Shown here: positions 35,616-58,586 of the stretch, one piece after another | Position numbering within the stretch: position 1 is the stretch's first letter | Layout: every line of letters starts with the position of its first letter | Assembly (NCBI GenBank): GCA_001938485.1 | Contig: MQRK01249112.1 | Coordinates: 106,604-165,189, forward strand | DNA: 58,586 nt | Reading direction: 5' to 3' | Origin: Girardia tigrina | Lineage: Eukaryota | Notes under the pieces: generated by a model | Told to the model about the DNA's origin: nothing | Seen by the model: only the letters and a program-made list of their open reading frames with translations | Databases searched by the model: none | Made by a program: the position numbers and the translations under genes

Positions 35616-35658
35616 GTAAACTTGTATTATTAATATTATTATTATTATGTAAAAATAG

Positions 35659-42156: not shown

Positions 42157-42910
42157 GTGATTTATTTTCGTATTTTCTTAAGTATAAATGTTAAGTTTAT
42201 TTTATTTTTTATGTAAATTTCTTAGCCGATACGATACATTCCCTTAAAACATTATATAATGGCGTCTGTATAGAGATGAATATGTCTACGATTTGTAGGA
42301 TCATCTCTGTGAAAAGTGGTTGCAACGTCTATATCAGAATTCATATTTTTTAAACACCAAAATTTATTACTATAACAATTCACATTTCTAAAACAAATTT
42401 TCCTGTTAATTTAATTTAATTATCTCGACCCAAATTAATCTATTAAATTCTTTTCGATTTAATTTGTAAAATCCTGGAAATTTATTTCGAAAATTTATTT
42501 CAAAAAATTATTTAAACTTTATTTTCAAAATCAATTTTTAAAATTGCTTATTAAAAATATTTTTATTTATAAATAAATATTTAATNNNNNNNNNNNNNNN
42601 NNNNNNNNNNNNNNNNNNNNNNNNNNNNNNNNNNNNNNNNNNNNNNNNNNNNNNNNNNNNNNNNNNNNNNNNNNNNNNNNNNNNNNNNNNNNNTTAATTT
42701 TTTAAAATATTTAATAAGCAAATTAACATAAAAATATTTTACCCTTTAAATTAAAAAAAATAATAAACTATTCAGGCGAGATAAAAATTTAAAATTAACC
42801 CCTCATAATCTCAATTTATAAACTCTTTAAGAAAAATAAATGAAAGATTTATTCATGCTCTTGTAAATTATTAAATTTCCCGTTATAAATTTATAGACTC
42901 AACTATCTTA

Positions 42911-44328: not shown

Positions 44329-44619
44329 GTTGATTTTCAAAAATGTTATCTAACATCGAATGCTGTTTATGAACTTATCGATTACAGTACATGTTTCAGA
44401 ATATTCTCCATCATCAGCAATTATATTGATGCCATAATGTTATTTTTTATTTTTAAAAGGGAACAAACCCATCATTTATTTATTTATTAATGGTTTTTAT
44501 GGTAAAAAAAGTTTTAAAAATTTTAATTAACGATTTTAAGACTTGAAACGGCTTTACTTTGTCCATTTCGAATACTTATTAATGAGTTATAGTGTCTTAT
44601 TGATAATGATTCACGAACC

Positions 44620-45771
44620 CTGGTTCACAATCAGCTAAATTATATGGGCTTACTAAAATACATACAGCTGGTCATCCACTCCACACTGTATTATCGATGA
44701 TTAAGACTGTGCAGTACAATGTCGTAAAGATTATTTATTCCTAATTGAGTCCCTTGATTTTCAATGAATTTGAGATCAGGGATAGCTTTGAATTCAAAGA
44801 TTTCATTTTTGATCAGATACCTAAAGTCGATTCTGAATGTATGATCTCATTTGATGTCTCCAGTTTATTTACGAATGTGCCCATCGATGAAACTATTGAT
44901 TTGTGTGAACAATTATGGGATGATAATTCTGACTGCGTGAATGAAGTAATAAATAAAAATGGAATAAAAAACTGCTTTTTCAACGATGAATGGTACATTC
45001 AGAAAGATAGAGTAACAATGGGTTCCTCAACGTTGACATTAATTTTTATGATGTCCTTTGAGGATAAAATTGATACATACTTGGGGAAAACTTGAGAAAT
45101 ACAGGAGATATGTAGATGACATTTTTCTTGTTTACAAAAACGAATCCCTTATAGAACCATTCTTAAAATCTTTGAATGATCTACATCCTAATATCAAATT
45201 CACTACAGAATCGGAAGTTAATAACACACTTCCTTTTCTTGACATTCTTATCACTAGGATGAATTGGAAATATCGAACTGAATTATACAGAAAAACCACA
45301 GATGCAATTCTCCCGTTATCTTTCGTGATCTTGCGTGAGGAAAAATATAGAGAGGGTATGATAAAGGGCCTAGGTCACAGACTTGGGAGTTTGTTTTCCT
45401 ATTTTGAAACCGCAAATCATGGTTTAAATATTCTTAGAAGACGCTTGAGGGATAAAATTTATACAAACAAAAAGATAGATCACAACAATAATGTTATGTT
45501 GGACTACTTATGTACACAAATATTGGTTAAGAAAGGATTAAATGAAGAAAACATTCAAAAGCACAAGCAAATAATCAAAATACCATATTCTGAAAGATTT
45601 AAAGCATTTAAAAAGAGTATTTGCAAGAATAAAAGTATTGTCAAAGTTGTTTCAATAATTTAAAAAGTTCAAAGCTTCCTCTCGAATAAATCGAAAACGG
45701 TTTGTGAATCGCAAGCTTATCTAATTTATAAATTTGATTGTCACAGATGTAAAAACTCGTACATTGGAGAG
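44620..45771 (+). mobile_element. Penelope-like retroelement fragment (RT plus start of GIY-YIG)
   Basis: SFDVSSLFTNVP, MGS, RYVDDIF, IKFTTESE..LPFLDI..YRK; then LIYKFDCHRCKNSYIGE, truncated immediately afterwards. Confidence 0.9.
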
Positions 45772-45779
45772 TACAAAAC

Positions 45780-46366
45780 GAAATGATGGTTCACTAGGCA
45801 TCTGCGTAAAGATCATCGAATAGAAGCGAGGGAGAATATCAATGAACATCCGACAGAATCATCAGTGCAATCCAACAGAAGAAGCGACAATCCAGACAGA
45901 GACGAAGAACCCACACTTATCCAAACGACCAATTTTCAGCCAGCAACAGTCACCCGACTATTTCAACGGTGGTGGAGCAAACGACTTATCCCGAAGATAC
46001 ACATTTGACTTTTAGGATCGCAGATCCAAATGCGAGGGGAAAGTTCAAATGTCCCTTTCGCGGCTGTACCAAGTCCACCAATACAGCCAAAGGGATGCTG
46101 AATCCATGGTACCACAATTCATGATTGGTCGTTTGCAACAGGGAAGCCTAAGAAATTTCGGAGACTGAAGCACTACATCCCCGTAGGAGGCCTATCGGGG
46201 GGCAGGTAGCACTTTTTAGTTTGGGTGGACCCTCTAAAGAGCCTAGTGGCTCAATACCATTCGAAAGAGATGGGAGGCCCACATTGGAGAGACAAATCGG
46301 CATCTCAAAACCCTGTTTAGTGAGTATTCACAATCAAGTCGATCGAGTAAGGTTCTTGACCATGGG
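45780..46366 (+). mobile_element. Fragment with C2H2 zinc-finger remnants and a GC-rich tail, probably from a non-LTR element
   Basis: WFTRHLRKDH and FKCPFRGCTKSTNTAKGMLN remnants; higher GC than the flanks. Confidence 0.35.
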
Positions 46367-46429
46367 TTACACTGTAAAAATAGAATCTTTAATTTCATAT
46401 ACTACACCTGATTTTTTTTTCTTACTCAT
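46367..46429 (-). pseudogene. Truncated viral ORF start (MSKKKKSGVVYEIKDSIFTV)
   Basis: Same upstream context (TTTAAAAGAAAATGAGT) as the 47047 ORF; it ends at the junction with the unrelated fragment. Confidence 0.4.
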
Positions 46430-46450
46430 TTTCTTTTAAAATATTATAAA

Positions 46451-46552
46451 AATCCAATTAAATCCAAAATCCAAAATCCAATTAAATCCAAAATCCAAAA
46501 TCCAATTAAATCCAAAATCCAAAATCCATTTAAATCCAAATCCAAAATCAAA
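46451..46552. repeat. Tandem repeat, ~24-bp unit (AATCCAATTAAATCCAAAATCCAA) x ~4
   Basis: Direct reading. Confidence 0.9.
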
Positions 46553-47047
46553 TTAAATCTTATTTTCTTTTTGTCTTGTTTTTAAATTAGTTTGTCCTTT
46601 TGCTCTTCCTTTATAATTCCCAGTTCTTTTCGATGATGTTATTGATTCAGTAATTTCACTACATTCATTAACAGATGAAGATTTCTCGTTATCAATTTTC
46701 CAAGAACTAATTTTTTCTTCTAAATTATGTTCTTTAAGATCTTTTAAAATTTCTTCTTTATTTTCATCTTTTTGTAATAATCTCGCATTAAGATTATAAT
46801 TTTCTTCCTTTAGAAGTTTTATAGTATTTTCTAATTTCCTATTTTTTTCCTCTAATTTCAATATTTTATCATTTGAAAAATCAGATGTTTCACTTTTTTC
46901 TTTTAGCATCGTTTGAAATTGAAATGCTAATAATTTATATTCTTCCATCTTTTTTTCGTAAAAAGATATATCATTATTATATCGTGATTTGTAAAAATCA
47001 CAATCTAAACATTTATTTATTAATAAATTTTTTTTTGTCTCACTCAT
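46553..47047 (-). CDS. Viral coiled-coil protein of unknown function, divergent from the ATPase
   Basis: Intact 164-aa ORF with CLDC near the N-terminus, heptad repeats and a basic C-terminus. Confidence 0.6.
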   Translation of the reverse strand: MSETKKNLLINKCLDCDFYKSRYNNDISFYEKKMEEYKLLAFQFQTMLKEKSETSDFSNDKILKLEEKNRKLENTIKLLKEENYNLNARLLQKDENKEEILKDLKEHNLEEKISSWKIDNEKSSSVNECSEITESITSSKRTGNYKGRAKGQTNLKTRQKENKI

Positions 47048-47110
47048 TTTCTTTAAAAATAATTTGAAAATTTTTTCAAAATTTTTTTACCAAAAATTCA
47101 AATTTTAAAA

Positions 47111-48016
47111 ATGAAGGAAAAACTGAATATTTTAACAATGTATGAGTCAAAATTCAAGAATAAACTGTTCCCAAAGAACTTTAGACTGTTAATAGTTGGT
47201 GAATCGGGATGCGGTAAAAATGTTTTATTAACAAAAATGTTACTAGAAGATGGATTTCTCGATTTTAATAATCTAATATTTTATTCCATAACTATTGATC
47301 AACCGGAACTTAAAGTTATTTCAAGTGGATTCCGTTTTGAAGATGGATCATCTTTAACAAAAATGGGAATTCGTGATGTTTTCGAAAAACAGAAAATGTT
47401 ATTAGAAATGATAAAAAAAGAATTAGGAAATAATAATTCTGATTATGTTCCTCCTCCGGAATATCTCGTTTATGCGTATAAAAGATTTATTAATAATAAT
47501 AATAATATTGATAAATCAAAATATTTAATTAGAGATCCTGAAAAAGCGATATCAGTTCTCTTTTCAAGTGATCCTAATCAAATCGTCGCTTGCGACTCTC
47601 TACCGAAAGATGCAAAAAATCTCATTATTTTCGATGATGTTGTAAACTTATCAGATCAGAAAATAATGAAATCGTATTTCACCAGAGGACGTCATAATAA
47701 CTGTAATACGATATACATCTCCCAAACTTTCTACGGATTGGATAAGCATTCTATCCGGAATAATTCCACTGGATTCATTTTTTTCGAATTAGGAAAAAGA
47801 GATAAATCTTATATCTTTTCTGATCTCTTACCCAATAGTGAAAATATCAACGAATATCAGCGGGAAATAATTCATCACTGGCAGCGTAAAAAATATAATT
47901 ATATTTATTTTGATCGCACTGAAAAAAAAATTTATAAAAATTTATTTACAGAAGAAGAAATATCAATCGAAAATCCGAATATGCACTCAGATATTGAAAA
48001 TGGAGAAAGTGATTAA
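47111..48016 (+). CDS. A32/FtsK-like genome-packaging ATPase
   Basis: Walker A LIVGESGCGKN, Walker B LIIFDD, FTRGRH, ISQ and IRNN motifs. Confidence 0.92.
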   Translation: MKEKLNILTMYESKFKNKLFPKNFRLLIVGESGCGKNVLLTKMLLEDGFLDFNNLIFYSITIDQPELKVISSGFRFEDGSSLTKMGIRDVFEKQKMLLEMIKKELGNNNSDYVPPPEYLVYAYKRFINNNNNIDKSKYLIRDPEKAISVLFSSDPNQIVACDSLPKDAKNLIIFDDVVNLSDQKIMKSYFTRGRHNNCNTIYISQTFYGLDKHSIRNNSTGFIFFELGKRDKSYIFSDLLPNSENINEYQREIIHHWQRKKYNYIYFDRTEKKIYKNLFTEEEISIENPNMHSDIENGESD

Positions 48017-48158
48017 TAAAATGATTTCATAAAATAAAAAAAACTTAGATTTTCCTTGAAAAAATAAATAATATTATTCTTTCCTTATCTAACAATATGC
48101 CTTTAATATCATGTCTATAGAAAATAGCTTGATAGTATTGGAAATTTTTATTAAGAAA

Positions 48159-48623
48159 ATGATGATTATTAAAAAAGAAGGTGGAGACATTCAACAATCT
48201 ATGGGAAATTTTGCAAAATATATTCCTGGATTTATGAAAACAAAATACGGTGAACTGCATTTACCAGGTAAAAATTATTGTGGTCCACTAACAAGATTGG
48301 ATATTCGATTAGATGAAAATGATCAACCAATTGGAGAAGATAATAAACCCGTTGATGGATTGGATCAGGCATGCTATAAACATGATATCGCCTACAGATC
48401 TGAAGATTTACGAGATCGGCACTTGGCGGATGTAAATCTTATTCACGATATCAATCAACTTCAAGATCTGACTTTACGACAAAAATTTGAAAGATTTCTC
48501 ATAAAATTTATTATGAAAGGAAAAATCGCATTTGGTGGTGAATTGGAAAATAAAATATATAATAAACAATTAGCTAAAGAACTGCATAAAGCTCATAAAA
48601 AAATAAGGACTTTCTCCGCATAA
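48159..48623 (+). CDS. Parvovirus-VP1u-like phospholipase A2 domain; N-terminal half of a PLA2-integrase fusion
   Basis: ELHLPGKNYCGP (Ca-binding loop), LDQACYKHDIAY (HDxxY), RHLAD. The ORF ends with the integrase N-terminal motif LAKELHK. The start is placed at the AAGAAAATG context. Confidence 0.88.
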   Translation: MMIIKKEGGDIQQSMGNFAKYIPGFMKTKYGELHLPGKNYCGPLTRLDIRLDENDQPIGEDNKPVDGLDQACYKHDIAYRSEDLRDRHLADVNLIHDINQLQDLTLRQKFERFLIKFIMKGKIAFGGELENKIYNKQLAKELHKAHKKIRTFSA

Positions 48624-49480
48624 ATGTTAAATCACTGAATCGGATTTGGTCAGCCGACTTGATAACTGTTGACGCGAAAGAGGATACTGAAAATGGAGTC
48701 GTTGCAACAACAATAACAAAATCAGGACAAACTCGTAAAATTTGGAAATATTATATTTTAACAGTTATAGATATTTATTCACGATATGGTTTTTTTCGTT
48801 TTTTACCAAATAAGAAATCTGAATCAATAATCCAAGCTTTCATTTCAATCTTAACGGAATTGGAAAATACTGAATTACCAATTCCAAAATATTTATGGGT
48901 TGACCAGGGAGCTGAATTCACAAATAAAGAATTTGATAAAAAATTCCTAAAAGCGAATAATATTAAAATGTATTTCGTAAAGGAAAAACCCGTTTTTATT
49001 GAAAGATTTAATAGAACATTAAAATCTGAAATCTATAAACTATTTACTGAGAAAGGTGAGAAAGTTATCACTGAAGCGGAAATGCAAAAAATATTAGAGA
49101 ATTATAATAATAGAATTCATAGCTCTATCCGTGTGTCACCACACGATGTAATGTTTAATAATGCTATTCCACAACCAAAACCACAAAAATTACCCAAGAA
49201 AAAAGTTAAACCAAAATTCAAAGTTGGAGATCGAGTTCGTGTATTCGAAACAAAAATATTTAGTGGTGATAAACCTGAAGGTACTCGTAATAAAAATCAA
49301 GAACGGAAATTACAAACTTTTAAAAAAGGTTATGAACCGAAATGGACGAGAGAAATTTATGTAATTTCTCAAGTTTTGGACCATGAATATCCCGTTACAT
49401 ATAAATTAATAAATCCAGAAAAAGATCGGGAACTATTTGGTCGGTTCTATGAAGCGGATTTACAAAAATCAAATTTTTAA
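48602..49480 (+). CDS. int: Retroviral-like (rve) integrase of Polinton type
   Basis: DDE triad IWSADL / LWVDQGAEF / IERFNRTLK; C-terminal PKFKVGDRVR..FKKGY.PKWTRE..PVTYKL..G.FYE..LQ. No chromodomain. Confidence 0.93.
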   Translation, partial: NKDFLRINVKSLNRIWSADLITVDAKEDTENGVVATTITKSGQTRKIWKYYILTVIDIYSRYGFFRFLPNKKSESIIQAFISILTELENTELPIPKYLWVDQGAEFTNKEFDKKFLKANNIKMYFVKEKPVFIERFNRTLKSEIYKLFTEKGEKVITEAEMQKILENYNNRIHSSIRVSPHDVMFNNAIPQPKPQKLPKKKVKPKFKVGDRVRVFETKIFSGDKPEGTRNKNQERKLQTFKKGYEPKWTREIYVISQVLDHEYPVTYKLINPEKDRELFGRFYEADLQKSNF

Positions 49481-49485
49481 AGAAA

Positions 49486-50901
49486 ATGGAAACAAGTTTT
49501 GAAAAACCAATAAGTCAATTAACCACAGGGATGATTCCCTTGGGAATTTTAGATCTTGATAATAATAAGGAATTTACTCATGTTTTGAAAAAATCTGATA
49601 TAATAAAATTGGCTCCAACATCTGGATCACAAGCATATATGAATAGTAATGGAACTCTGGTTTACCAATTATCGCAAACCACTGATCCGATAGATATTTG
49701 TAACGCAAAATTAGTTTATGATATTGAAATAAAAGACAGTGATTGTGTTTTGGAGACTAATTTCTTTCCAAAATTATTTTCATGCATGTCATTAAAATTA
49801 GGTAACTATGTCGTTGAATCGATAAATAATTCTGGAGTTGTATCGGATATGCTATTATATGTGTCTAAAGACCGAAACTATTTACCATGCGGAGAAATAA
49901 CTGATTTTATTCCAGATCATTATGAAATGATATATGGTGAGAAAATACCTGCGGTATCAACTGCATCTACAAGTAAAAAAATTGATGATGAAGAGGATAC
50001 TCCCGGTTCGAGCGGAGGTACTAACAATACCACAGAAGTTCCAGCGGGTCTACGATACCGAAATATTGGTTATGAAATTCGGAAAGATCAGTTTAAGAAA
50101 AATAGATTCAGAGGTGCTTTCTCACTGAAACATCTCTTTGGATTTTTACAAAATTATAACCGAGTTATTTATAATATTCTTCTAGAATTCACAATGGTGC
50201 GAAAACTTGATGATAAAAGTATTTTTTATTCAGAAAAAGGAACCAAAGGAAAATTAACGATAAATTCCCTGGAACTGCATATGAATCAATTGGAATTGAA
50301 TATCGATTATTATGCTCGANNNNNNNNNNNNNNNNNNNNNNNNNNNNNNNNNNNNNNNNNNNNNNNNNNNNNNNNNNNNNNNNNNNNNNNNNNNNNNNNN
50401 NNCGAGAAAGTTTTCTCCTGGAATGTCGCATATCTAAATTATTTACCAAGATATATTTTCGTGGGAATGAAATTACAAGATTCAAATTACAACTGGAATA
50501 ATTCCCGTTTTCATATGGATTCTAATGAATTCACGATTCAGCTGAAATTGAACAATACTTATTATCCTATTCAACCAATGGTGAATGAAAAAGCGAATCA
50601 GAATTTTTATGATTTATATAATTCATATGTTCAATGTTCTCGCGGATTCCAAGATAAAACCCCAATGCTATCGTTAAAAGATTGGAAAAGTTTATATCCA
50701 ATTATCTGTTTCGATACTAGTGATATCGATAAAACTTTGGATGTCAATAACGTCACCGTTACACTTCTCATTCGAAAATCAGAAACTTTTCAACCGAAAA
50801 TGTATTGTGTAATTTTGGAAGAAGCAAAAATAAAAATGTCTCTACGAGGATCACAAATCACAATAATCGAACCATTCAAAGGAACCGTTGATAAGAAATA
50901 A
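49486..50901 (+). CDS. Double jelly-roll major capsid protein
   Basis: 471 aa, beta-rich, with Polinton-MCP-like motifs (LF..MSLKLGN..VE, LKHLFGF, PRYIFVG, YPIICFD). It sits in the virion module. Confidence 0.8.
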   Translation: METSFEKPISQLTTGMIPLGILDLDNNKEFTHVLKKSDIIKLAPTSGSQAYMNSNGTLVYQLSQTTDPIDICNAKLVYDIEIKDSDCVLETNFFPKLFSCMSLKLGNYVVESINNSGVVSDMLLYVSKDRNYLPCGEITDFIPDHYEMIYGEKIPAVSTASTSKKIDDEEDTPGSSGGTNNTTEVPAGLRYRNIGYEIRKDQFKKNRFRGAFSLKHLFGFLQNYNRVIYNILLEFTMVRKLDDKSIFYSEKGTKGKLTINSLELHMNQLELNIDYYARXXXXXXXXXXXXXXXXXXXXXXXXXXXXEKVFSWNVAYLNYLPRYIFVGMKLQDSNYNWNNSRFHMDSNEFTIQLKLNNTYYPIQPMVNEKANQNFYDLYNSYVQCSRGFQDKTPMLSLKDWKSLYPIICFDTSDIDKTLDVNNVTVTLLIRKSETFQPKMYCVILEEAKIKMSLRGSQITIIEPFKGTVDKK

Positions 50902-50970
50902 AGATACGAGCAGAATTGGGCATAATTTGTTTTTTTTATGAAAAAAAGAAAATATGAGATCCCTGAAGGT

Positions 50971-51007
50971 TAATAATTTTTATTCTCAGCGAGAACAAAA
51001 ATTATTA
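50971..51007 (+). promoter_or_regulatory. Pre-ATG hairpin 1
   Basis: TAATAATTTTT-A-TTCTC-agc-GAGAA-C-AAAAATTATTA; ATG at 51013. Confidence 0.6.
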
Positions 51008-51012
51008 TAAAA

Positions 51013-51702
51013 ATGGCTTCGAAAACAGATGCTTTAAAAATACGAAAATTAATAGATACACAAACTCCTGGTTTGATTCGAGTGAATGGAAAGGAAGTGT
51101 ATTTAAATCGGGAAATGTTGAAAAAGATTAAAGATTTAGAAAAGAATGGAGGAGAGATTGGTGGATATTATCACAGCGGAGGAATTTTACCACTTATTCC
51201 CGCTATAATCGCTGGTTTAACTACTCTTTTCACAGTAGGAGGAGCAGCCGCTGGAGTAGCCACTGGAGTTGCAAAAACTGTTGCAAATGCTCGCGAAGCA
51301 CAAAAGAATAAGGTTGAAACCGAGAAAGCAGAAATTGAAAAACAAATAAGACAAAAGGAACTTGATAGAATGAATGAACCAACAGGATCAGGATTACGGA
51401 AAGGAAAAAAAGGAGGAATTTTACCTTTTATAGCAGAAATAGAAAAAAATTTGCCAGGTTTATGGAAAATAGCTAAATCAGCACTAGATAGTTTAGGAGA
51501 AGGGTTGTACTTGGATGATTATACTGGTAAAGGAATTCAAAAATTTTTTCGTGAACAAATAAATCAATCGGATAAAGATCCAAAATCGAAAAAGGCTCTA
51601 TTGAATAAAAATAAAAAATTGGGAGGGAAATTGAAATGCCATTTCTTGGGAAAGGGATTATACTTGGAACCTTGGGATCCGAATAATCAGAATCAGATTT
51701 GA
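51013..51702 (+). CDS. pX-like core/membrane-active precursor protein
   Basis: GGILPLIPAIIAGL...GGAAAGVA resembles adenovirus pX (GGILPLLIPLIAAAIGA). A second GGILPF and several GxG(L/I) motifs follow. Confidence 0.65.
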   Translation: MASKTDALKIRKLIDTQTPGLIRVNGKEVYLNREMLKKIKDLEKNGGEIGGYYHSGGILPLIPAIIAGLTTLFTVGGAAAGVATGVAKTVANAREAQKNKVETEKAEIEKQIRQKELDRMNEPTGSGLRKGKKGGILPFIAEIEKNLPGLWKIAKSALDSLGEGLYLDDYTGKGIQKFFREQINQSDKDPKSKKALLNKNKKLGGKLKCHFLGKGLYLEPWDPNNQNQI

Positions 51703-51709
51703 ATAAAAA

Positions 51710-52045
51710 ATGAATAGAAATAATAATAATAATGATTTATATAATTTTATGCGAGCATTACCAGAACAATTACGAAAAGAGAAAGCAGCTCGACGGAAAT
51801 ACAATGAAAAAATTAAAAAAAGATTATACGTTCGCAGAAATGAGGGTATGCAATATCACGACCGACAACAGAAACCCATGAAATCGGAAGAGGAGATCAA
51901 AGCTCGACTTGAGGAGAAAAGATTAAAATTAAAAATATTAGAGCAAGAAATCCTAGCAAAATTATTTGCAAAGCAATTAAATCTTGAAAAACCGAAACAG
52001 AAAGAGGGAGAAGGAATTAGAAAAACAAAATCCATAAGAAAATGA
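51710..52045 (+). CDS. Small basic viral protein (possible core/DNA-binding)
   Basis: K/R-rich helical ORF ending EGEGIRK; its stop overlaps the next ATG (ATGA). Confidence 0.55.
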   Translation: MNRNNNNNDLYNFMRALPEQLRKEKAARRKYNEKIKKRLYVRRNEGMQYHDRQQKPMKSEEEIKARLEEKRLKLKILEQEILAKLFAKQLNLEKPKQKEGEGIRKTKSIRK

Positions 52046-53292
52046 CTATACAATTAAATGAAGGAGAAAATCGAGTATTAAAAGGTTTTGTTGCTACACA
52101 ACAACAACCTTTGAATGAACATCAAAAATATTTTGATTATTTACGAAAAAGTTTGGCACAATCCTCACTAGCAATCCATGAATACAATCGTCAAGAATTG
52201 GAATATAAAAGCGGTATAACCGATTTTCAAACATCAATGTCGAAAATGTTCCAACCTTTAATGACTGGATTACAAGGTCCCATCACAGACAGAATCTCAG
52301 CTCTAAAAACCAAAGTTGTTAAATTGGAAAATGATTTGAAACGATTTCTTGAAGTTGATATAAAGAATTATGATAATGTGAAATCCAAATCTTTTTTTGT
52401 TCAATATCAACAGGAATATTTACTCATTCAACAGGAATTAGCTCCGATAATGCAGGAAATGATTGAGAAATATCCACAAGATAAGGAATTTATCACCAGT
52501 CATCATGAGATAACAAAAAAATTATTAGAAGAGTTGGCACAGAAATTGGGAACGAAATTCGAACCTCAACAATTATCGCAAGCTGCTCCCTTTTTGGAAA
52601 TATTCTTTATTACAAGATATTATGAAAATTTCGGATCTTCTCCGATGTTGCGTCCAACGTTTGGAAGAAATGCCGAGGGAAAACAATTTATGACATTCAA
52701 TAAATATATATTTATTCTCATGAACGAGGGTGGAAAATATTATTTCGTGAGAAATGATAATCGGGTTCGGGTAGAGCTTGATGAGATTTTTAATAATATC
52801 CTAATTGGTAATTATGAAATTATTTTCAATAAAAGTTATACTCTGGAAGAAAAACATACATCATTTGACAAGTATTTATCATTTCTATTAAATAATGGAA
52901 TAAACGCTCGAGAAAGAGATTATTATTATACTAAACTTTGTTTTGATGCTTTTAATAAAGCTGAAGGATTAGTAGGAGAATTTGCGCAACCACTAGGATA
53001 TCCGAAAAAGGAAAGAACATCATCATTACCACGGTTACGATCACAAAAAGGAAAACCAAAAGAAAAATATTTCGATGCTCCTCAATCACCACCACCTGAA
53101 GGACAAGGAATACCTAAAGATCCGATTTCAATGTTTTCGTATTTGTATAAATATATCGCTGCAAAGAAGGCTGGTCATGATGGTTTGGATGATAATATTT
53201 TGAATATTATGAAGAAATTAAGACGAAAAAAATTATTAACAAAAGAAAAACAAGAGGAATTATTGAAAAAAATATTTGATAAAAATGGGTGA
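52042..53292 (+). CDS. Conserved Polinton-type protein of unknown function
   Basis: The C-terminal GQGIPKDP..MF..L...AAKKAGHDG...I..I...L resembles a GxG..DP..L..A..AG[NH] motif I recall from animal Polinton ORFs. Confidence 0.55.
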   Translation: MTIQLNEGENRVLKGFVATQQQPLNEHQKYFDYLRKSLAQSSLAIHEYNRQELEYKSGITDFQTSMSKMFQPLMTGLQGPITDRISALKTKVVKLENDLKRFLEVDIKNYDNVKSKSFFVQYQQEYLLIQQELAPIMQEMIEKYPQDKEFITSHHEITKKLLEELAQKLGTKFEPQQLSQAAPFLEIFFITRYYENFGSSPMLRPTFGRNAEGKQFMTFNKYIFILMNEGGKYYFVRNDNRVRVELDEIFNNILIGNYEIIFNKSYTLEEKHTSFDKYLSFLLNNGINARERDYYYTKLCFDAFNKAEGLVGEFAQPLGYPKKERTSSLPRLRSQKGKPKEKYFDAPQSPPPEGQGIPKDPISMFSYLYKYIAAKKAGHDGLDDNILNIMKKLRRKKLLTKEKQEELLKKIFDKNG

Positions 53293-53311
53293 CTCGCTTC
53301 GCTCGCCACGT

Positions 53312-53340
53312 TTTTTTATAATATTTCATATTATAAAAAA
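53312..53340 (+). promoter_or_regulatory. Pre-start hairpin 2
   Basis: Perfect 13-bp stem TTTTTTATAATAT-ttc-ATATTATAAAAAA directly before the penton frame. Confidence 0.6.
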
Positions 53341-54341
53341 TTGGTGAGAGTAGTGGATTTTCTACAACGTTTACAATTTCTGCTGCGAAATCGGAAATTA
53401 AAGTGCAACTACCTGTTCAGTTGAATCTGGATCCAAAACATAAATACGAAATCGGATTAGTTTGGTTCTCNNNNNNNNNNNNNNNNNNNNNNNNNNNNNN
53501 NNNNNNNNNNNNNNNNNNNNGGATTAGTTTGGTTCTCGACTTATAACTTGGTTGCGAATATCACTGAAACGAATAATTCGTTTTTATTAATCTATAAGGG
53601 TAAAGAATTTCCAGCTGATAAAAAATTTAAAAATGTGAATAAGATTGATGATCCTGAATTTGTTTATCTAGATTTAAAACTGAAACCAGGATCAAAAGGA
53701 TTCAAGGAAATCAATAAAGAAATCGGAGATCTAACGCAACAAATTATTCAAGTGAAAACGGATGAGAAAACTGCAAAATCAACAATTGTTATACCCGATA
53801 AATATGCACTAGAATTCAATCAGCAGTCATTCCTGCATTCGATGCATGGATTTGANNNNNNNNNNNNNNNNNNNNNNNNNNNNNNNNNNNNNNNNNNNNN
53901 NNNNNACTAGAATTCAATCAGCAGTCATTCCTGCATTCGATGCATGGATTTGATTCGAATAATAATAATTCATATTGGCTTGAAGTTAGTATAAAAGGTC
54001 CAGTGAAAGATTATGAATCGAAATTTACTTTTCAGATAACGGATATAAATATCTGTAATATTGATTGCAATATCGCAAATGGTGGATACGTTTCGTTTGA
54101 TGATGAAAATAAAGAAAATGAGAATGTGAAGAACTCTAATATTATTTATTCGTTTCCAGCGTTTACAGTTCCAATCGGCTATAAAATCAGTGAGCGACCA
54201 TCCTTCGTAACTTATTATCCGGTATACATTTATCAAATAAATGATTTCACTGTGAGAATTATTGATAATAAGGGGCGTTTAATAGATTTCCAAAATGAGA
54301 AAATAAATATGTGTTTACGCTTGAGACAAAGTGTATTATGA
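53340..54341 (+). CDS. Minor capsid protein (penton, single jelly roll); split by two artefactual gaps; starts at ATT
   Basis: SEIKVQLPVQLNL..KYEIGLVWFSTYN..NITETNN; later IDCNI..G, IYSFP..VPIGYKISERP..YYPV, VRIID.KGRLIDF. Sequences flanking both N-runs are duplicated. Confidence 0.85.
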
Positions 54342-54388
54342 AAATGATAGCTCAGCGAAGCCTCGTGATTTTGAATAAAATCAATTAA

Positions 54389-54426
54389 TGAGTAGAATTT
54401 TTTTCTACGAAAACAAATTCTACTCA
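54389..54426 (+). promoter_or_regulatory. Pre-ATG hairpin 3
   Basis: TGAGTAGAATTT-TTTTC-tac-GAAAA-C-AAATTCTACTCA; ATG at 54430. Confidence 0.65.
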
Positions 54427-54429
54427 AAA

Positions 54430-54927
54430 ATGATAGAATTTTACAATCTCGAAGACATAATGCAAATGTTCGGAGTTGACACTTCAACGAATATTCAACT
54501 TGAAGATTGGGCAAGAAAATTAAAAATTGAAATACAAGTTTTGATGGCTGATGAAGTGGATAAAAAAATAAATAATAAAAAACTTAGTATAATAAATTAC
54601 CAGGATTCAGATGAGAAAGGGAGTCATTGGGTGGGATTTTATAATGGAAAAGTGAAAAATGAGAAAGTATCTTATGAGAATGAAAACGCGACGAAGGAGC
54701 CGGTTTCATTCTATTTTGATCCGTATGGAATAGAACCTTTACCAGATTTTCCAAAATGTATATATAATTCAGTACAAGTACAACCCTTCGGAACACGATT
54801 ATGTGGACAATTGAGTTTATATTTTTTATTTAAAATGAATCAGTGTGAATGCAATAATAAGGCGCAAAAATTTGATGATATAATTGAGGAAATGTTAGAT
54901 TGTTTATGGCCAGAAACACTTCTATGA
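54430..54927 (+). CDS. Adenain-like (C5) maturation cysteine protease
   Basis: IINY..S..GSHWV (His), FYFDPYG (Asp), QVQ....LCG (Gln/Cys). The start is placed at the ATG after the hairpin. Confidence 0.92.
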   Translation: MIEFYNLEDIMQMFGVDTSTNIQLEDWARKLKIEIQVLMADEVDKKINNKKLSIINYQDSDEKGSHWVGFYNGKVKNEKVSYENENATKEPVSFYFDPYGIEPLPDFPKCIYNSVQVQPFGTRLCGQLSLYFLFKMNQCECNNKAQKFDDIIEEMLDCLWPETLL

Positions 54928-54950
54928 TTTAATTTTATAAAATGGGTAAC

Positions 54951-54990
54951 TGAGATGATTTTTTTTTCTTTTAAAAACAAAATCATCTCA
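54951..54990 (+). promoter_or_regulatory. Pre-ATG hairpin 4
   Basis: TGAGATGATTTT-TTTTT-ctttt-AAAAA-C-AAAATCATCTCA; ATG at 54995. Confidence 0.65.
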
Positions 54991-54994
54991 AAAA

Positions 54995-55603
54995 ATGAAT
55001 TATATTCCTGTGAATAAATTAGGAATGGTAATGCAGATTGGTGGAATGAAAGAGAAAATAAATGAAAATATTGAAGCAAATAATCGGAAATTGGATAAGA
55101 TATTTGTGAATACAGAAAAATTAGAGGAGAATAATAAAAAGTTGGATAAGATATTTGTGAATGAGCAGGGAAATGATGATGTTGAATCAATGCGAGTAAA
55201 AGAATCATTAATTGTTAAAGATAAAGATATTTATCAGGAAATAGATTCAATAAATAAATTTAAAAAATTTGTCATCAATCCATTGAATAAAAATGTTAGT
55301 GAGAATACGAAAAAGATTGATAATATTAATGAGAATATGAAAAAAATTGAAGAAAAGATTAATCAGAATATTCTTGAAAATGTTAAAAAAATTAATAAGG
55401 ATATTGAAAAGATTAATCAGAATATTCTTGAAAAAATTAATAAGGATATTGAAAAGATTAATCAGAATATTCTTGAAAATGTTAAAAATATTGTTGAAAA
55501 AATTAAAATGATAAATAAAGATATTCTGAATGTGGAAAAGAAAATAAAATTACATGAAAACTGTTTGAAGAAATGTATAGAAGAAATTAAGAAACCTAAA
55601 TAA
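54995..55603 (+). CDS. Coiled-coil repeat protein, putative fibre/spike
   Basis: N-terminal VNKLG; repeats of KINQNILE(NVK)KINKDIE and KLDKIFVN. Confidence 0.5.
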   Translation: MNYIPVNKLGMVMQIGGMKEKINENIEANNRKLDKIFVNTEKLEENNKKLDKIFVNEQGNDDVESMRVKESLIVKDKDIYQEIDSINKFKKFVINPLNKNVSENTKKIDNINENMKKIEEKINQNILENVKKINKDIEKINQNILEKINKDIEKINQNILENVKNIVEKIKMINKDILNVEKKIKLHENCLKKCIEEIKKPK

Positions 55604-55605
55604 AA

Positions 55606-56151
55606 ATGTATGTGAATAAATTGGGAGAATCTTGGTTGGACGCGGAATACGTCAATGAGAGTGGAGATCAGATTCCCGATTTGGAAGTTGGGAATTTGGT
55701 TGTTGATAATCTTGTAGTGAGGAGTCTTCATCAAAATCCGATAGGAGATTTAAAATTGAAAATTAATTTTAATTATTCAGAAGAAGTTAAAAAACAGGAG
55801 AAAGATTTAAAAGTATTAGATGTATCTTTGAAAATAATAGGAAAATATTCTCAACGATATAAATTCGACTTTTCCAACTTTGAAGGGGAAATAAATGAAG
55901 TTGATGAAGAGGAATTAAAAAAACATAATATTGAAGATATATTAAAAAAATTAACTTTTGAATATATCCATAGAATAATTATTGAAGTAAAAGATTACAA
56001 AAAAATAAAAGGAGGAGGAGGAATTATAGTATCCAAAGATGTTATTGTTAAATACGAATATTATAACTGGGTGGAAATAAGGAATTTTGAAAATTATTTT
56101 TTTAATCTTCATATTCCACCGTTGTTTTTAAGAAAAAAAAATATTTTATGA
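55606..56151 (+). CDS. Viral protein with N-terminal VNKLG, putative fibre-related
   Basis: Starts 2 nt after the previous stop; MYVNKLG; LEVGNLVVDNLVV beta-repeat-like stretch. Confidence 0.5.
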   Translation: MYVNKLGESWLDAEYVNESGDQIPDLEVGNLVVDNLVVRSLHQNPIGDLKLKINFNYSEEVKKQEKDLKVLDVSLKIIGKYSQRYKFDFSNFEGEINEVDEEELKKHNIEDILKKLTFEYIHRIIIEVKDYKKIKGGGGIIVSKDVIVKYEYYNWVEIRNFENYFFNLHIPPLFLRKKNIL

Positions 56152-56830
56152 CTACTGAAAATGAGATAACTTTTTTTAAACATTTAAAAGCATTAGAAGA
56201 AAAATTAAAAGAAAAATTAGATTTAGTTTTTTTTATAATATGACTTTTTATTCATTTGAAAAATATGTAAAAGAATTAAAAGAACGGGAAGTTAGGATAA
56301 AATTGGAAAAAGTAGGAGAAAAAAGAATTCAAATATTGAATTCATCTGATTCTGAATCGATGTATATTAATTTTTATTTGAAAAATAAAGTGGAAAGACT
56401 GGAAGCTCGGATACAGACATTGGAACAACATTTGAAAAAATATACACATGAAATAATTAATCACCAGGAACAGACAAATGAAATTATTTTTCAAAAATTT
56501 ATTAATAAATTCATAGTGAATTCATTGTTAAGTGTTGAAGAATTGAAAATTATTAAATACTCATTTGCTGAAATATTTGAAATGCATATATATAAATTTA
56601 TTGTGAATCTATATGATGAAAATTATAAAATCGTAAAAGTAATCCACTTGACAAATATCAGTTTATTCGGGAATTGGGAAATTAAAAATAAAAAATATTA
56701 TGTTATATTCAATAATACGATTAATAAGTATTATGTTTTTCAATATTTCATATTTTATTATTATTTATTTTTCAAATGGAAATATGTTGTAAATACTTTC
56801 GAAGTAAAAAAGGAATTGATAAGAAAATGA
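56148..56830 (+). CDS. Viral protein of unknown function; probable homopolymer frameshift at the T8 run 56227-56234
   Basis: An ATGA-coupled start (MTTENEITFFKHLKALEEKLKEKL) connects to the 56240-56830 ORF through the T-run. Confidence 0.45.
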
Positions 56831-56857
56831 GTGACTCGCTTCGCTCGCCACGTTTTC

Positions 56858-56895
56858 TGAGATGATTTGTTTCTATAAAAACAAAAATCATCTCA
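56858..56895 (+). promoter_or_regulatory. Pre-ATG hairpin 5
   Basis: TGAGATGATTT...AAAAC-AA-AAATCATCTCA; ATG at 56899. Confidence 0.65.
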
Positions 56896-56898
56896 AAA

Positions 56899-57543
56899 AT
56901 GGGCGAAGAAATGAAAACTTCTGTGGAAGAAAATGTTTCGTATCCTGATTTGTACATGGAAGAATTTTTACAAAAGTATAATAAACCGGTAACTCCTGAA
57001 ACTTATAAAAAAGAATTGAATACTTTGCATGTTCAGTATTTTAAGAAAGATTTGGAATATTTAAGTGAGCATATTGCTCATTATCAGAAATTACATAAAA
57101 GATGGAAACGAATTGCTATAACAGTAAAATATTGTAATGGGATATTAACTTTCGTTGGATCTGTTGGAGCNNNNNNNNNNNNNNNNNNNNNNNNNNNNNN
57201 NNNNNNNNNNNNNNNNNNNNNNNNNNNNNNNNNNNNNNNNNNNNNNNNNNNNNNNNNNNNNNNNNNNNNNNNTAATTTAATAACTTTGAAAAAATTGAAA
57301 AAATATCGAAATTATTTACGAACATTAGAAAAGACTAATGATGAATTATTTATGTTTCATAAGAAAGCATTGAGTGATAATTTGATAACTGATGAAGAGT
57401 TAAAAATGAGTAAAGATATTTTGGAGAAGTGTAAAATAAATATTGGAAAATTAAATGATGGACAAAAGAGAGAGGATAAAACGAATACTTTAATTACAAA
57501 TGATCATTTGGAAAAATTGAGAATATTATTAGAAAAAATATAA
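56899..57543 (+). CDS. Putative membrane protein of a Polinton accessory family
   Basis: A hydrophobic segment starts at IAITVKYCNGILTFVGSVG (rest in the gap), followed by KKLKKY...KALSDNLITDEEL. Confidence 0.55.
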   Translation: MGEEMKTSVEENVSYPDLYMEEFLQKYNKPVTPETYKKELNTLHVQYFKKDLEYLSEHIAHYQKLHKRWKRIAITVKYCNGILTFVGSVGXXXXXXXXXXXXXXXXXXXXXXXXXXXXXXXXXXXNLITLKKLKKYRNYLRTLEKTNDELFMFHKKALSDNLITDEELKMSKDILEKCKINIGKLNDGQKREDKTNTLITNDHLEKLRILLEKI

Positions 57544-57567
57544 AAATAAAATTTTAAATAAAAAAAA

Positions 57568-57909
57568 ATGGATAAAGAAATATTTATTTGTGATATATGT
57601 AATTTTAAAGGATTAATACAAAATAAACAGAGACATTTGAATAGTAAAAAACATCATGTAAAAACGAATTTTGAAAAAGTTTATAAAGCTGTTAAAAATA
57701 ATTCCAATTCAGAAAATAATAATAGTAATTCCGATCCTGAATATGAATATAATCTAAATATTGGGTTTAATCCAAATAATAAATATAATCCAAATAATGA
57801 ATATAATCCAAATAATGGGTTTAATCCAAATAATGAATATAGTTATTCTGATCCTGAATATATACCGAATACAGAAAATAGTTCCTTTTGTGATGATGAA
57901 AATGAATAA
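57568..57909 (+). CDS. C2H2 zinc-finger protein with NPNN(E/K/G)(Y/F) repeats
   Basis: CDIC..........HLNSKKH; 18-bp tandem repeats at about 57766-57840. Confidence 0.65.
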   Translation: MDKEIFICDICNFKGLIQNKQRHLNSKKHHVKTNFEKVYKAVKNNSNSENNNSNSDPEYEYNLNIGFNPNNKYNPNNEYNPNNGFNPNNEYSYSDPEYIPNTENSSFCDDENE

Positions 57910-57992
57910 AAATTTAAATGGTCATAAATAATCTAATATTTTTAATTTGTTAGTCTAATATAATTTTTATTTTCAGCAATAAAATAACCATT

Positions 57993-58016
57993 AGCTATTC
58001 TTCGGAATAGCTTTTT
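57993..58016 (+). terminator. Hairpin AGCTATTC-TTCG-GAATAGCT followed by a T-run
   Basis: Perfect 8-bp stem with a C(UUCG)G loop, intergenic, followed by TTTT. Function is inferred only. Confidence 0.4.
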
Positions 58017-58056
58017 GGCACCCGAATTGGGAAATGCTATAATATTTTTAAAGAAA

Positions 58057-58586
58057 ATGTCCATAAAATTTTTACAAAAGATGAGTTTAAGAAGAAGATC
58101 AAAAAAATTTGATATTTGGGATGAAGAGAGTTTAAATTTAGAGTGGTTATTCTTATTACCTGAGATAAATAATATTAATGAGAATGTTGATTTGAGTATT
58201 GATGTTGAAGATGATGAAGAAGAAATTGAAACAGATACCGAATCCAATAATATTTGGCGGAATATTATTGGAAGAGATATCGATTTCAATTTTGGTGATA
58301 GTGATGATGAAAATTTTATTATAAAAATAAAAAAGAAAAAAAAATTAGACGAAGAGGAAATGAGTACAGATAATGATTGTGAATCTTTAGACGGAAATAA
58401 TATTGTGAATGAAAATCCATTGTATTGTTCATATTGTAGAAAACATTTTAAAAATAAATCTGGAATTGGTTCACATAATAGAAGTATACAACATATAAGA
58501 AATGTGAATCTTCAAGGAATTGAAGGAGAAGGAATTGGAGAAGATGAAAACATGGAAATAGTTGAAAATGATGAATGCTCTTATCT
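58057..58586 (+). CDS. Acidic, C2H2 zinc-finger-containing ORF open at the window end (possibly the N-terminus of pPolB)
   Basis: Not in the supplied ORF track because it has no stop. MSIKFLQKMSLRRRSKK...CSYCRKHFKNKSGIGSHNRSIQH...QGIEGEGIGE. Confidence 0.6.
   Translation, partial: MSIKFLQKMSLRRRSKKFDIWDEESLNLEWLFLLPEINNINENVDLSIDVEDDEEEIETDTESNNIWRNIIGRDIDFNFGDSDDENFIIKIKKKKKLDEEEMSTDNDCESLDGNNIVNENPLYCSYCRKHFKNKSGIGSHNRSIQHIRNVNLQGIEGEGIGEDENMEIVENDECSY

What the first reader, a model, noticed from the sequence alone, without database searches (positions are those of the whole stretch)
46367..58586. Near-intact endogenous Polinton/adintovirus-like virus with a complete virion module
Seen: more than 12 kb of tightly packed intronless ORFs with ATPase, PLA2, DDE integrase, capsid-like and adenain motifs. 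The few lesions (homopolymer slips, one ATT start) contrast with the heavily decayed transposons nearby, and the N-gaps have duplicated flanks. Known: this gene set defines Polintons/Mavericks/adintoviruses. Inferred: this is a young, probably multicopy and possibly virion-competent family in a flatworm-like host.
Basis: partly seen in the sequence, partly recalled or inferred. Interest (0 to 1): 0.85.

Follow-up and report, generated by a model that had tools for sequence, protein, structure and literature searches.

The report
Integrated Polinton-type virus, partial copy
This is the capsid-and-integrase part of a Polinton/Maverick-type DNA virus sitting in an animal chromosome, a well-known kind of element, and its main point of interest is that its membrane-breaching phospholipase belongs to the same gene as its integrase.

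Summary
From about 46.37 kb to the window's end, 95% of the + strand is open reading frame, against 19% in the rest of the window and about 0.1% in shuffles.

Tools identify these genes:
- an A32-type packaging ATPase;
- a parvovirus-type PLA2 domain;
- an rve integrase;
- a double-jelly-roll major capsid protein;
- a penton protein. A relative's confident model matches the mavirus, adenovirus and Sputnik pentons.

The adenain-like protease has only weak support. No replication gene, terminal repeat or target duplication is in the window, and the last ORF runs off its end. "Near-intact" and "complete" therefore cannot be shown.

Breaks counted:
- one frame change, in the PLA2-integrase gene;
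- no canonical start codon for the penton gene;
- four assembly gaps, of which two, not all, have duplicated flanks.

New point: twelve relative clusters encode PLA2 and integrase as one protein, so the two ORFs here are one gene. I found no description of this fusion.

The host is an animal, shown by a CEP63-like multi-exon gene and transposons nearby. "Flatworm", copy number and age could not be tested.

Verdict: a divergent new member of a known kind, of moderate interest.

The parts
46442..46567 (.). 24-nt tandem repeat (about 5 units) just inside the left junction. A 42-nt block at 46412-46453 recurs at 47030-47071 with 86% identity.
   Evidence: (D2, D8, D10)
46553..47047 (-). Only - strand ORF of the element, 164 aa, coiled-coil-like, function unknown.
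   Evidence: no Pfam hit
47111..48016 (+). A32/FtsK-HerA-type genome-packaging ATPase, 301 aa, open throughout.
   Evidence: Pfam Pox_A32 E 1e-8, 35.3 bits against a cut-off of 22.8
48111..49480 (+). PLA2-integrase gene: an N-terminal parvovirus-type PLA2 domain followed by an rve integrase with a C-terminal SH3/chromo-like tail. Broken: one frame change between the two parts, so it reads as two ORFs. No internal stops were seen inside the aligned pieces.
   Evidence: Pfam. 12 fused relatives of 381-434 aa. Each gives two colinear tblastn matches in two frames. HD dyad and DDE columns are conserved. PDB integrase cores.
49486..50901 (+). Major capsid protein of double-jelly-roll type. One assembly gap (50320-50402). 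No stop or frame change was detected outside the gap. It has an extra low-complexity loop of about 45 residues relative to its relatives.
   Evidence: Pfam DJR-like_dom on both sides of the gap. Full-length alignment with 9 relatives at 22-42% identity. The low-confidence model still ranks DJR capsid proteins first.
51013..51702 (+). 229-aa ORF with a Gly/Ala-rich hydrophobic stretch and basic tracts. Inferred to be an internal or membrane-active virion protein.
   Evidence: position between capsid genes; no Pfam or PDB hit
51710..52045 (+). 111-aa, very basic ORF. Inferred to be a DNA-condensing core protein.
   Evidence: no Pfam hit
52042..53292 (+). 416-aa ORF of unknown function. Its start overlaps the preceding ORF's stop by 4 nt.
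   Evidence: no Pfam or PDB hit
53337..54341 (+). Penton (vertex, single-jelly-roll) protein gene. Two assembly gaps (53471-53520 and 53856-53905) with exactly duplicated flanks. The open frame has no canonical start codon. No stop or frame change inside the three pieces.
   Evidence: 342 relatives of the C-terminal piece. Colinear hhalign of the three pieces. Relative's model at pLDDT 94. Foldseek matches to mavirus, adenovirus and Sputnik pentons.
54388..54927 (+). Probable adenain-like (clan CE) cysteine protease, open throughout. Relatives and the upstream hairpin suggest the start at 54430.
   Evidence: H, D, Q and C motifs invariant in 5 sequences. Peptidase_C5 hits only at E 0.008 and 0.06 in two relatives. 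No PDB hit.
54995..55603 (+). 202-aa ORF made of internal coiled-coil repeats, function unknown.
   Evidence: (D1, D4, D5)
55606..56151 (+). 181-aa ORF, function unknown.
56240..56830 (+). 196-aa ORF, function unknown.
56899..57543 (+). 214-aa ORF, function unknown, with one assembly gap (57171-57272). Continuity could not be tested.
57568..57909 (+). 113-aa ORF with an N-terminal C2H2-like finger and Asn-rich repeats.
   Evidence: (D3)
57988..58586 (+). Acidic ORF with a C2H2-like finger that runs off the window end. The element is therefore cut here.
54389..54429 (+). Gene-start hairpin, copy 1. It ends directly before the ATG at 54430.
54951..54993 (+). Gene-start hairpin, copy 2. It ends 1 nt before the ATG at 54995.
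56858..56898 (+). Gene-start hairpin, copy 3. It ends directly before the ATG at 56899.
53282..53339 (+). 58-nt intergenic motif with a GC-rich core. A second copy lies at 56824-56881 (83% identity).
   Evidence: (D7)

Best explanation
Window 46.37-58.59 kb is part of an integrated genome of a Polinton/Maverick-class virus (class Polintoviricetes, 'adintovirus-like') in an animal chromosome.

Shown:
- It encodes a double-jelly-roll major capsid protein, a single-jelly-roll penton protein, an A32-type packaging ATPase and an rve integrase.
- The integrase carries a parvovirus-type phospholipase A2 domain at its N-terminus.
- A probable adenain-like maturation protease is present, on weak evidence.

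Inferred working, from established knowledge of adenoviruses, virophages, parvoviruses and retroviruses:
- Capsid-protein trimers and penton pentamers build an icosahedral shell.
- The ATPase pumps the linear dsDNA into the shell, and the protease matures internal proteins.
- The small basic and hydrophobic ORFs between the capsid and penton genes are core or membrane-active virion proteins.
- The PLA2-integrase travels inside the particle. Its PLA2 domain opens the endosomal membrane on entry, and its integrase part then inserts the genome into the chromosome.
- The three conserved hairpins placed directly before start codons, and the shared intergenic motifs, are the element's own gene-expression signals.

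State of this copy:
- It is mostly open but not demonstrably whole.
- It has one frame change in PLA2-integrase, no canonical start for the penton gene and four assembly gaps.
- The replication gene and the right end lie outside the window, or are lost.
- The left edge abuts an unrelated repeat.
For: - ORF density is far above chance.
- Pfam identifies Pox_A32, Phospholip_A2_4, rve and DJR-like_dom.
- The capsid protein aligns full length with 9 DJR-domain relatives. Even its poor model ranks the mavirus, Sputnik, STIV, PRD1 and PBCV-1 capsid proteins first.
- Penton: 342 relatives of mostly 230-280 aa. The three window pieces are colinear with the family profile. A relative's model at pLDDT 94 matches the mavirus penton (E 1e-12), adenovirus penton base, Sputnik penton, adomavirus LO5 and MELD/adintovirus pentons. 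There is a weak profile hit to the PBCV-1 and atadenovirus pentons.
- PLA2-integrase: 12 fused relative clusters, one with 114 members on contigs up to 83 kb. The two-frame match to the window is colinear. The catalytic HD and DDE columns are conserved. PDB integrase cores match.
- Protease: the H, D, Q and C motifs are invariant across copies at 81-91% identity.
- Animal context: CEP63 exons, mariner, Tc1 and pogo fragments. Named penton and integrase relatives come from Lottia gigantea and Diachasma alloeum.
- The junction lies inside a gapless stretch, 42694-50319.
- The literature records PLA2 genes and this gene set in animal Maverick-Polintons (PMC8502044, PMC5803895, 10.64898/2026.06.19.733378) and Polintons in flatworms (PMC8532177, 10.1101/2025.04.19.649669).
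Against: - No protein-primed polymerase or any other replication gene was detected in 46368-58586.
- Terminal inverted repeats and a target-site duplication cannot be checked.
- The protease has no hit above any curated threshold.
- The model of the window's capsid protein is poor, with pLDDT 46 and TM about 0.17 to its hits.
- Eight ORFs, about 4.5 kb in all, have no recognisable relatives.
- One position of the ATPase P-loop departs from the canonical pattern. One position of the PLA2 calcium loop departs from what all 12 relatives have. Activity of these two proteins in this copy is therefore uncertain.
- The assembly is a draft with many gaps. The frame change may be a sequencing error, and the junction may be an assembly join.
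Confidence: 0.85

Rival explanations
1. It is a truncated, dead fragment, not most of a near-intact element. The left side, including a - strand gene, was cut off where the other repeat now lies, and the replication module is gone.
For: - A 42-nt block that holds the start of the - strand ORF at 47047 recurs at 46412-46453. There it is followed by only about 20 codons before the junction (D10, 12).
- The left flank carries reverse-transcriptase-like and GIY-YIG-like motifs, seen by eye.
- No replication gene is in the window.
- This copy has one frame change and a penton gene without a canonical start.
Against: - 95% of the + strand is still open, which argues against long neutral decay.
- The ORF train continues to the very end of the window, so the missing genes may simply lie beyond it.
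- Pfam does not confirm the nature of the left flank.
Confidence: 0.3
2. It is the genome of a free virus or a contaminant, joined to host DNA by the assembler.
For: - The assembly is a draft with 11 gaps in 58.6 kb.
- Unmerged duplicated gap flanks lie inside the element.
- The composition steps sharply at the junction.
Against: - The junction lies within a gapless stretch.
- The element's GC (28%) is close to that of the rest of the window (30%).
- The 45% GC segment is a short stretch on the flank side of the junction, ending a region with reverse-transcriptase-like motifs, not the element.
- Related penton and PLA2-integrase genes sit on contigs of 83 kb to 2 Mb elsewhere, which means they are integrated.
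Confidence: 0.07
3. It is a Polinton-like virus or a virophage-type element rather than a Maverick-Polinton.
For: - The best structural matches of the penton family are a Tetraselmis virus protein and the mavirus penton.
- No pPolB was seen.
Against: - Sequence identity to those structures is only 13-15%.
- An rve integrase, a protease-like gene and a PLA2 in animal DNA fit Maverick-Polintons. The published framework says a phospholipase is common in its group 2 and that pPolB is often replaced there (10.64898/2026.06.19.733378).
- Named relatives come from animals.
Confidence: 0.05

Closest known systems
Animal Maverick-Polintons with a phospholipase gene (Alpha-type adintoviruses with 'PLA2X'; 'group 2' Maverick-Polintons; class Polintoviricetes)
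   Same: Both have a DJR capsid protein, a penton, an A32/FtsK-type ATPase, an adenain-type protease, an rve integrase and a parvovirus-type PLA2. Both are integrated in animal genomes (PMC8502044; 10.64898/2026.06.19.733378).
   Different: - In those elements PLA2 is described as a separate virion gene with a pX-like tail. Here and in 12 relative clusters PLA2 is the N-terminal domain of the integrase.
- No PolB was seen in the window.
- The capsid protein is at most 42% identical to anything found.
Spodoptera frugiperda Mavericks 1 and 2 (PMC5803895)
   Same: The gene set is the same: ATPase, integrase, PLA2-bearing protein, adenain-like protease with weak scores, and PolB.
   Different: - Their PLA2 sits in a separate 'CAP' protein.
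- Their integrase has a chromodomain. No chromodomain is detected here, whereas many non-fused relatives have one.
Mavirus virophage capsid proteins (PDB 6g42 penton; 6g44 and 6g45 major capsid protein)
   Same: These are the best solved-structure matches for the penton family (E 1e-12) and for the capsid-protein model (E 2e-5). Mavirus also has an rve integrase and a cysteine protease.
   Different: - Sequence identity is only 10-14%.
- Mavirus depends on a giant virus in a protist, whereas this element lies in an animal chromosome.
- Mavirus has no PLA2.
Parvovirus VP1 unique-region PLA2
   Same: The Pfam family is the same (Phospholip_A2_4), with a conserved HD dyad and calcium loop. The presumed role in endosome escape is the same.
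   Different: In parvoviruses the domain is tethered to the capsid protein. Here it is tethered to the integrase.
Retroviral and Ty3 integrases (for example PFV integrase 3l2q, Ty3 7z0h)
   Same: The catalytic core is homologous (E 4e-7 to 2e-6).
   Different: The element has no retroviral N-terminal zinc domain, a PLA2 domain takes that place, and it is a DNA virus.

Membership tests
Polinton/Maverick (Polintoviricetes) | Retrovirus-like (rve) integrase | tested here: met
   Pfam rve E 7e-9. 632 relatives. PDB integrase cores. DDE columns conserved. One frame change upstream within the same gene.
Polinton/Maverick (Polintoviricetes) | [quoted passage not shown] | tested here: inconclusive
   No such Pfam hit in any ORF of 46368-58586. 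The ORF train runs off the window end, so the gene may lie outside.
Polinton/Maverick (Polintoviricetes) | Terminal inverted repeats | not testable with these tools
   The right end is not in the window. No convincing inverted partner of the left end was found inside it.
Polinton/Maverick (Polintoviricetes) | Target-site duplication (6 bp) | not testable with these tools
   Testing needs both ends of the element.
Polinton/Maverick (Polintoviricetes) | Double-jelly-roll major capsid protein | tested here: met
   Pfam DJR-like_dom on both halves, 25.4 and 34.9 bits against a cut-off of 27. All 9 relatives carry PF21738. Foldseek ranks DJR capsid proteins first, though from a poor model.
Polinton/Maverick (Polintoviricetes) | Single-jelly-roll penton (minor capsid) protein | tested here: met
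   The fold was tested on a relative that is 43% identical over the C-terminal piece, not on the window's gapped gene.
Polinton/Maverick (Polintoviricetes) | A32/FtsK-HerA packaging ATPase | tested here: met
   Pfam Pox_A32, 35.3 bits against a cut-off of 22.8.
Polinton/Maverick (Polintoviricetes) | Adenain-like (C5/Ulp1-type) cysteine protease | tested here: inconclusive
   The motif order H, D, Q, C is invariant. Peptidase_C5 hits are below the cut-off and only in relatives. No PDB hit.
Adintoviruses, Alpha type (Starrett et al., PMC8502044) | PLA2X: a PLA2 gene with a C-terminal pX-like domain | tested here: not met
   PLA2 is followed by the integrase within one gene in 12 relative clusters and, in two frames, in the window.
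Adintoviruses (Starrett et al., PMC8502044) | Animal host | tested here: met
   CEP63 exons (one above the Pfam cut-off) and animal-type transposon fragments in the flanks. Named relatives are in Lottia and Diachasma. The phylum of the host was not determined.
Virophages (Lavidaviridae) and Polinton-like viruses | Close sequence relationship of capsid genes; protist or giant-virus context | tested here: not met
   Only fold-level likeness, at 13-15% identity. The chromosomal context is animal.

The most novel reading that the evidence does not exclude
The PLA2-integrase fusion marks an undescribed lineage of animal Maverick-Polintons. In this lineage the enzyme that breaches the endosome and the enzyme that integrates the genome are one virion-borne protein. 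That would imply the integrase is packaged and delivered with the DNA, as in retroviruses. The lineage would also have its own gene-start hairpin signal.
Probability: 0.35. Interest if true: 0.55.

Novelty: new member of a known kind. Interest (0 to 1): 0.4.

Why it matters
Endogenous Maverick-Polintons with capsid genes are already known across animals, flatworms included. The element as such adds a divergent member rather than a new kind.

Two things are worth keeping:
- The PLA2 domain and the integrase are one gene in a sizeable set of relatives. This gives a testable idea about how these viruses enter and integrate: the integrase would be a virion component tethered to the membrane-lytic domain. 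It also gives a simple marker for a sub-lineage.
- The penton family found here has 342 clusters and no Pfam model. It now has a confident fold assignment, which can be used to annotate these genes in animal genomes, where they are labelled hypothetical.

Tried and rejected
- Window capsid protein, structure prediction: the alignment has only 10 sequences, so the model is poor (pLDDT 46). The fold search with it is used only as weak support.
- Sequence searches of PDB gave nothing for the capsid-protein profile, the protease alone or as a profile, the ATPase (only P-loop noise), and the 416-aa and 229-aa ORFs.
- Rfam on the whole window gave no family, and no tRNA was found.
- A search for a second copy or fragment of the element elsewhere in the window found none.
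- Host identification by exact look-up of three flank ORFs: none is on record.
- Cluster look-ups for names returned almost none.
- Pfam on the left-flank ORFs did not confirm a reverse transcriptase.
- I considered that PLA2 and integrase are two separate genes, as in published Mavericks. I rejected this because 12 relative clusters are single ORFs that match both window ORFs colinearly.
- I considered a programmed frameshift. I rejected it as the default reading because the relatives need none.
- I looked for adenovirus-type cleavage motifs in the PLA2-integrase linker. The conserved Gly-rich linker does not fit that consensus, so I make no claim.
- A literature search for a PLA2-integrase fusion found nothing. 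This shows only that it is absent from the library I could search.

Full report
**1. What is there**

From 47111 to the last base of the window, the + strand carries an almost unbroken train of ORFs, and one ORF lies on the - strand at 46553-47047. Open stretches of at least 100 codons cover 95% of the + strand of 47111-58586. The figure is 19% for the rest of the window and a mean of 0.1% in 200 shuffles. In DNA with 28% G+C this cannot be chance. The composition steps at about 46.37 kb: GC is 45% in 45700-46367 and 21% in 46368-47110. The step lies inside a gapless stretch, 42694-50319.

**2. The gaps, tested first**

Four N runs lie in the element.

- **Capsid gene gap (50320-50402).** The left side hits Pfam DJR-like_dom at profile positions 50-132 and the right side at 171-313. 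Both sides align colinearly with nine relatives, which have about 30 residues where the window shows 28 X. The two sides therefore belong to one gene. Whether they are in frame cannot be known, because the gap length is an estimate.
- **Penton gene gaps (53471-53520 and 53856-53905).** These two 50-N gaps have exact direct copies abutting each edge, 17 nt and 48 nt long (D9). The copies translate to the same residues on both sides.
- **The other two gaps.** The 83-N gap in the capsid gene and the 102-N gap at 57171-57272 have no duplicated flanks.
- **Gap 57171-57272.** It lies in an ORF without known relatives, so its continuity could not be tested.

I filled no gap, merged no duplicate and joined no pieces.

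**3. The genes**

- **47111-48016: packaging ATPase.** It is an A32-type packaging ATPase (Pfam Pox_A32, above the cut-off).
- **49486-50901: major capsid protein.** Only nine relatives were found in the 5.8-billion-protein collection. The best is 40-42% identical, and all carry PF21738. With so shallow an alignment the model was poor (pLDDT 46). Even so, a fold search put the mavirus, Sputnik, STIV, PRD1-type, iridovirus and PBCV-1 capsid proteins first (E 2e-5 to 1e-3, TM about 0.17). I count that as weak support on top of Pfam.
- **53337-54341: penton protein.**
  - Its C-terminal piece alone finds 342 clusters, mostly proteins of 230-280 aa that match at their C-terminus.
  - The three window pieces map to columns 4-42, 48-133 and 140-239 of a 66-sequence alignment of these relatives.
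  - One relative, P0015, folds with pLDDT 94. Its model matches the mavirus penton (E 1e-12), adenovirus penton bases and the Sputnik penton in PDB.
  - In BFVD it matches a Tetraselmis virus protein, the mavirus minor capsid protein, adomavirus LO5 and MELD/adintovirus pentons.
  - The family has no Pfam model. Its only named members found are two 'hypothetical proteins' of the limpet Lottia gigantea, on scaffolds of 0.45 and 2.1 Mb.
- **54388-54927: candidate protease.**
  - It has four relatives at 81-91% identity on short JGI and ENA contigs.
  - The His, Asp, Gln and Cys motifs, in adenain order, are invariant among them.
  - The only family signal is Peptidase_C5 at E 0.008 and 0.06 in two relatives, below the cut-off. 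PDB gives nothing. The assignment is probable, not shown.
- **Between the capsid and penton genes.** Three ORFs lie here: 229 aa with a Gly/Ala-rich hydrophobic stretch, 111 aa and very basic, and 416 aa. None has relatives that I could find. Their roles as virion core or membrane-active proteins are inferred from position and composition only.
- **Right of the protease.** Six more + strand ORFs follow. One is built of coiled-coil repeats, and two have weak matches to C2H2-type zinc-finger families. The last runs off the window.
- **Replication gene.** No ORF in the element matches a DNA polymerase, helicase or primase.

**4. PLA2 and integrase are one gene**

- Among the best 120 of 632 integrase relatives, twelve clusters are single proteins of 381-434 aa with Phospholip_A2_4 at the N-terminus followed by rve.
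- One of these clusters has 114 near-identical members on ENA contigs up to 83 kb. It is therefore a multicopy integrated family in some other genome.
- Each of the twelve gives two colinear tblastn matches to the window. Its N-terminal 120-170 residues match the PLA2 frame and the rest match the integrase frame.
- The window gene is thus a PLA2-integrase with one frame change. I give no position.
- Conserved features:
  - The HD dyad of PLA2 and the linker are conserved.
  - The integrase Asp, Asp and Glu columns are conserved, and the first Asp motif is present in the integrase frame.
  - The family profile matches retroviral and Ty3 integrase cores in PDB.
- One position of the PLA2 calcium loop departs from what all twelve relatives share. 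One position of the ATPase P-loop departs from the canonical Walker A pattern (compared with established knowledge).
- Many other relatives are the usual rve-plus-chromodomain integrases of Polintons.
- The papers I could search describe PLA2 in Mavericks and adintoviruses as a separate virion gene, called 'CAP' or 'PLA2X' (PMC5803895, PMC8502044, PMC4642659, PMC3671162). None mentions a fusion to the integrase.

**5. Breaks, counted**

| Gene | State |
|---|---|
| PLA2-integrase | one frame change |
| Penton | no canonical start codon in its open frame; two assembly gaps |
| Capsid protein | one assembly gap, nothing else detected |
| ATPase | open |
| Protease | open |
| Other ORFs | cannot be judged, for lack of relatives |

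The assembly is a draft, so the frame change may be an error of sequencing.

**6. Surroundings**

- **Host gene.** Two exons of a CEP63-like gene lie at 24378-24740 (above Pfam's cut-off) and at 35175-35633. I searched them exon by exon and left the joined model out.
- **Transposon fragments around them.** These are a mariner HTH at 31670-32017 (-), a Tc1 HTH at 23236-23787, a gag-like zinc-knuckle ORF at 18754-19812 (-), and a pogo-type CENP-B_N fragment at 43619-43819 (-).
- **What this shows.** This is animal chromosomal DNA, and not human. The phylum could not be determined. Three flank ORFs are not on record, and the relatives carry almost no names.
- **Left flank.** The 1.6 kb left of the junction shows reverse-transcriptase-like and GIY-YIG-like motifs by eye. 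Pfam does not confirm them.
- **Left edge.** A 42-nt block that contains the start of the - strand ORF recurs close to the junction and is followed by only about 20 codons. The left edge may therefore be a truncation rather than the true terminus.

**7. Signals**

- A hairpin of 15 predicted pairs occurs three times, only in the element. Each copy ends directly before an ATG or 1 nt before it (54430, 54995, 56899). None is expected by chance, and four pairs show compensatory changes.
- A 58-nt motif with a GC-rich core follows two ORF ends (D7). Weaker versions follow others.

**8. Verdict**

- The element belongs to the Maverick-Polinton class by five features that were tested and met: integrase, DJR capsid protein, penton, ATPase and animal host.
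- Two features are inconclusive: the protease and the replication gene.
- Two cannot be tested: the terminal repeats and the target duplication.
- It does not have the PLA2X architecture of Alpha adintoviruses.
- Polintons are already reported in flatworms and many other animals (PMC8532177; 10.1101/2025.04.19.649669). I therefore rate it a new, divergent member of a known kind, with the PLA2-integrase fusion as the one feature that may be new.

**9. Steps left out and a note on conduct**

I did not do the following:
- fetch the contigs of any relative;
- look up the element's own proteins in public assemblies;
- join frames or pieces;
- collapse gap duplicates;
- build any consensus.

Searches printed single-frame alignments of each open frame of the PLA2-integrase gene with natural relatives. 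These alignments reach the ends of the two frames. While reading them I noted to myself that the frame change must lie near where they end. I derived no position and record none.

Noticed in passing
window 24378-24740 and 35175-35633 (+): Two exons of a CEP63-like centrosomal protein gene, separated by about 10 kb of intron that holds transposon fragments and large assembly gaps. A weak further coiled-coil hit lies at 41881-42216.
   Followed up: partly
window 44745-46130 (+): ORFs and broken frames with reverse-transcriptase-like (YxDD) and GIY-YIG-like motifs, seen by eye. They end in a 45% GC tail that abuts the element. This may be a Penelope-like retroelement, but Pfam gives no hit.
   Followed up: partly
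window 43619-43819 (-), 31670-32017 (-), 23236-23787 (+), 18754-19812 (-): Fragments of pogo-type (CENP-B_N), mariner (HTH_48) and Tc1 (HTH_Tnp_Tc3_2) transposases, and a gag-like ORF with zinc knuckles. All are short pieces, in contrast with the open element.
   Followed up: partly
window 54389-54429, 54951-54993, 56858-56898: A conserved hairpin with four compensatory pairs, each copy ending directly before a start codon or 1 nt before it. It is absent from the rest of the window. It may be a gene-start or transcript-end signal of the element.
   Followed up: partly
window 53282-53339 and 56824-56881; weaker after 50901, 54341, 54927 and 56151: A shared intergenic motif: an AAAATGRGT-like word followed by a GC-rich core and a T run, placed after ORF ends. 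It suggests discrete transcription units.
   Followed up: no
window 46412-46567 and 47030-47071: A 24-nt tandem repeat of about 5 units lies next to the left junction. A 42-nt block holding the - strand ORF's start is duplicated close to the junction.
   Followed up: partly
within window 49486-50901: The capsid protein has a loop of about 45 residues, rich in Ser, Thr, Gly, Asp and Glu, that none of its nine relatives has. It is probably a surface loop.
   Followed up: no
proteins P0239 and P0294-P0307 (not in the window): A cluster of 114 near-identical PLA2-integrase proteins on ENA contigs of 5-83 kb. This is a multicopy integrated family of the fused type in another, unnamed assembly.
   Followed up: partly
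proteins P0019 and P0023 (Lottia gigantea XP_009058815.1, XP_009048973.1): Penton-family proteins annotated only as hypothetical proteins, on Mb-scale limpet scaffolds. The family of 342 clusters has no Pfam model.
   Followed up: no
window 54995-55603, 57568-57909 and 57988-58586: One ORF is built of repeats of about 15 residues of coiled-coil type. Two ORFs share a C2H2-like finger with Asn-rich or acidic low-complexity tails. Their functions are unknown.
   Followed up: no
within window 47111-48016 and 48111-48623: One position of the ATPase P-loop and one of the PLA2 calcium loop are non-canonical in this copy. Counts only; no residues are given.
   Followed up: partly
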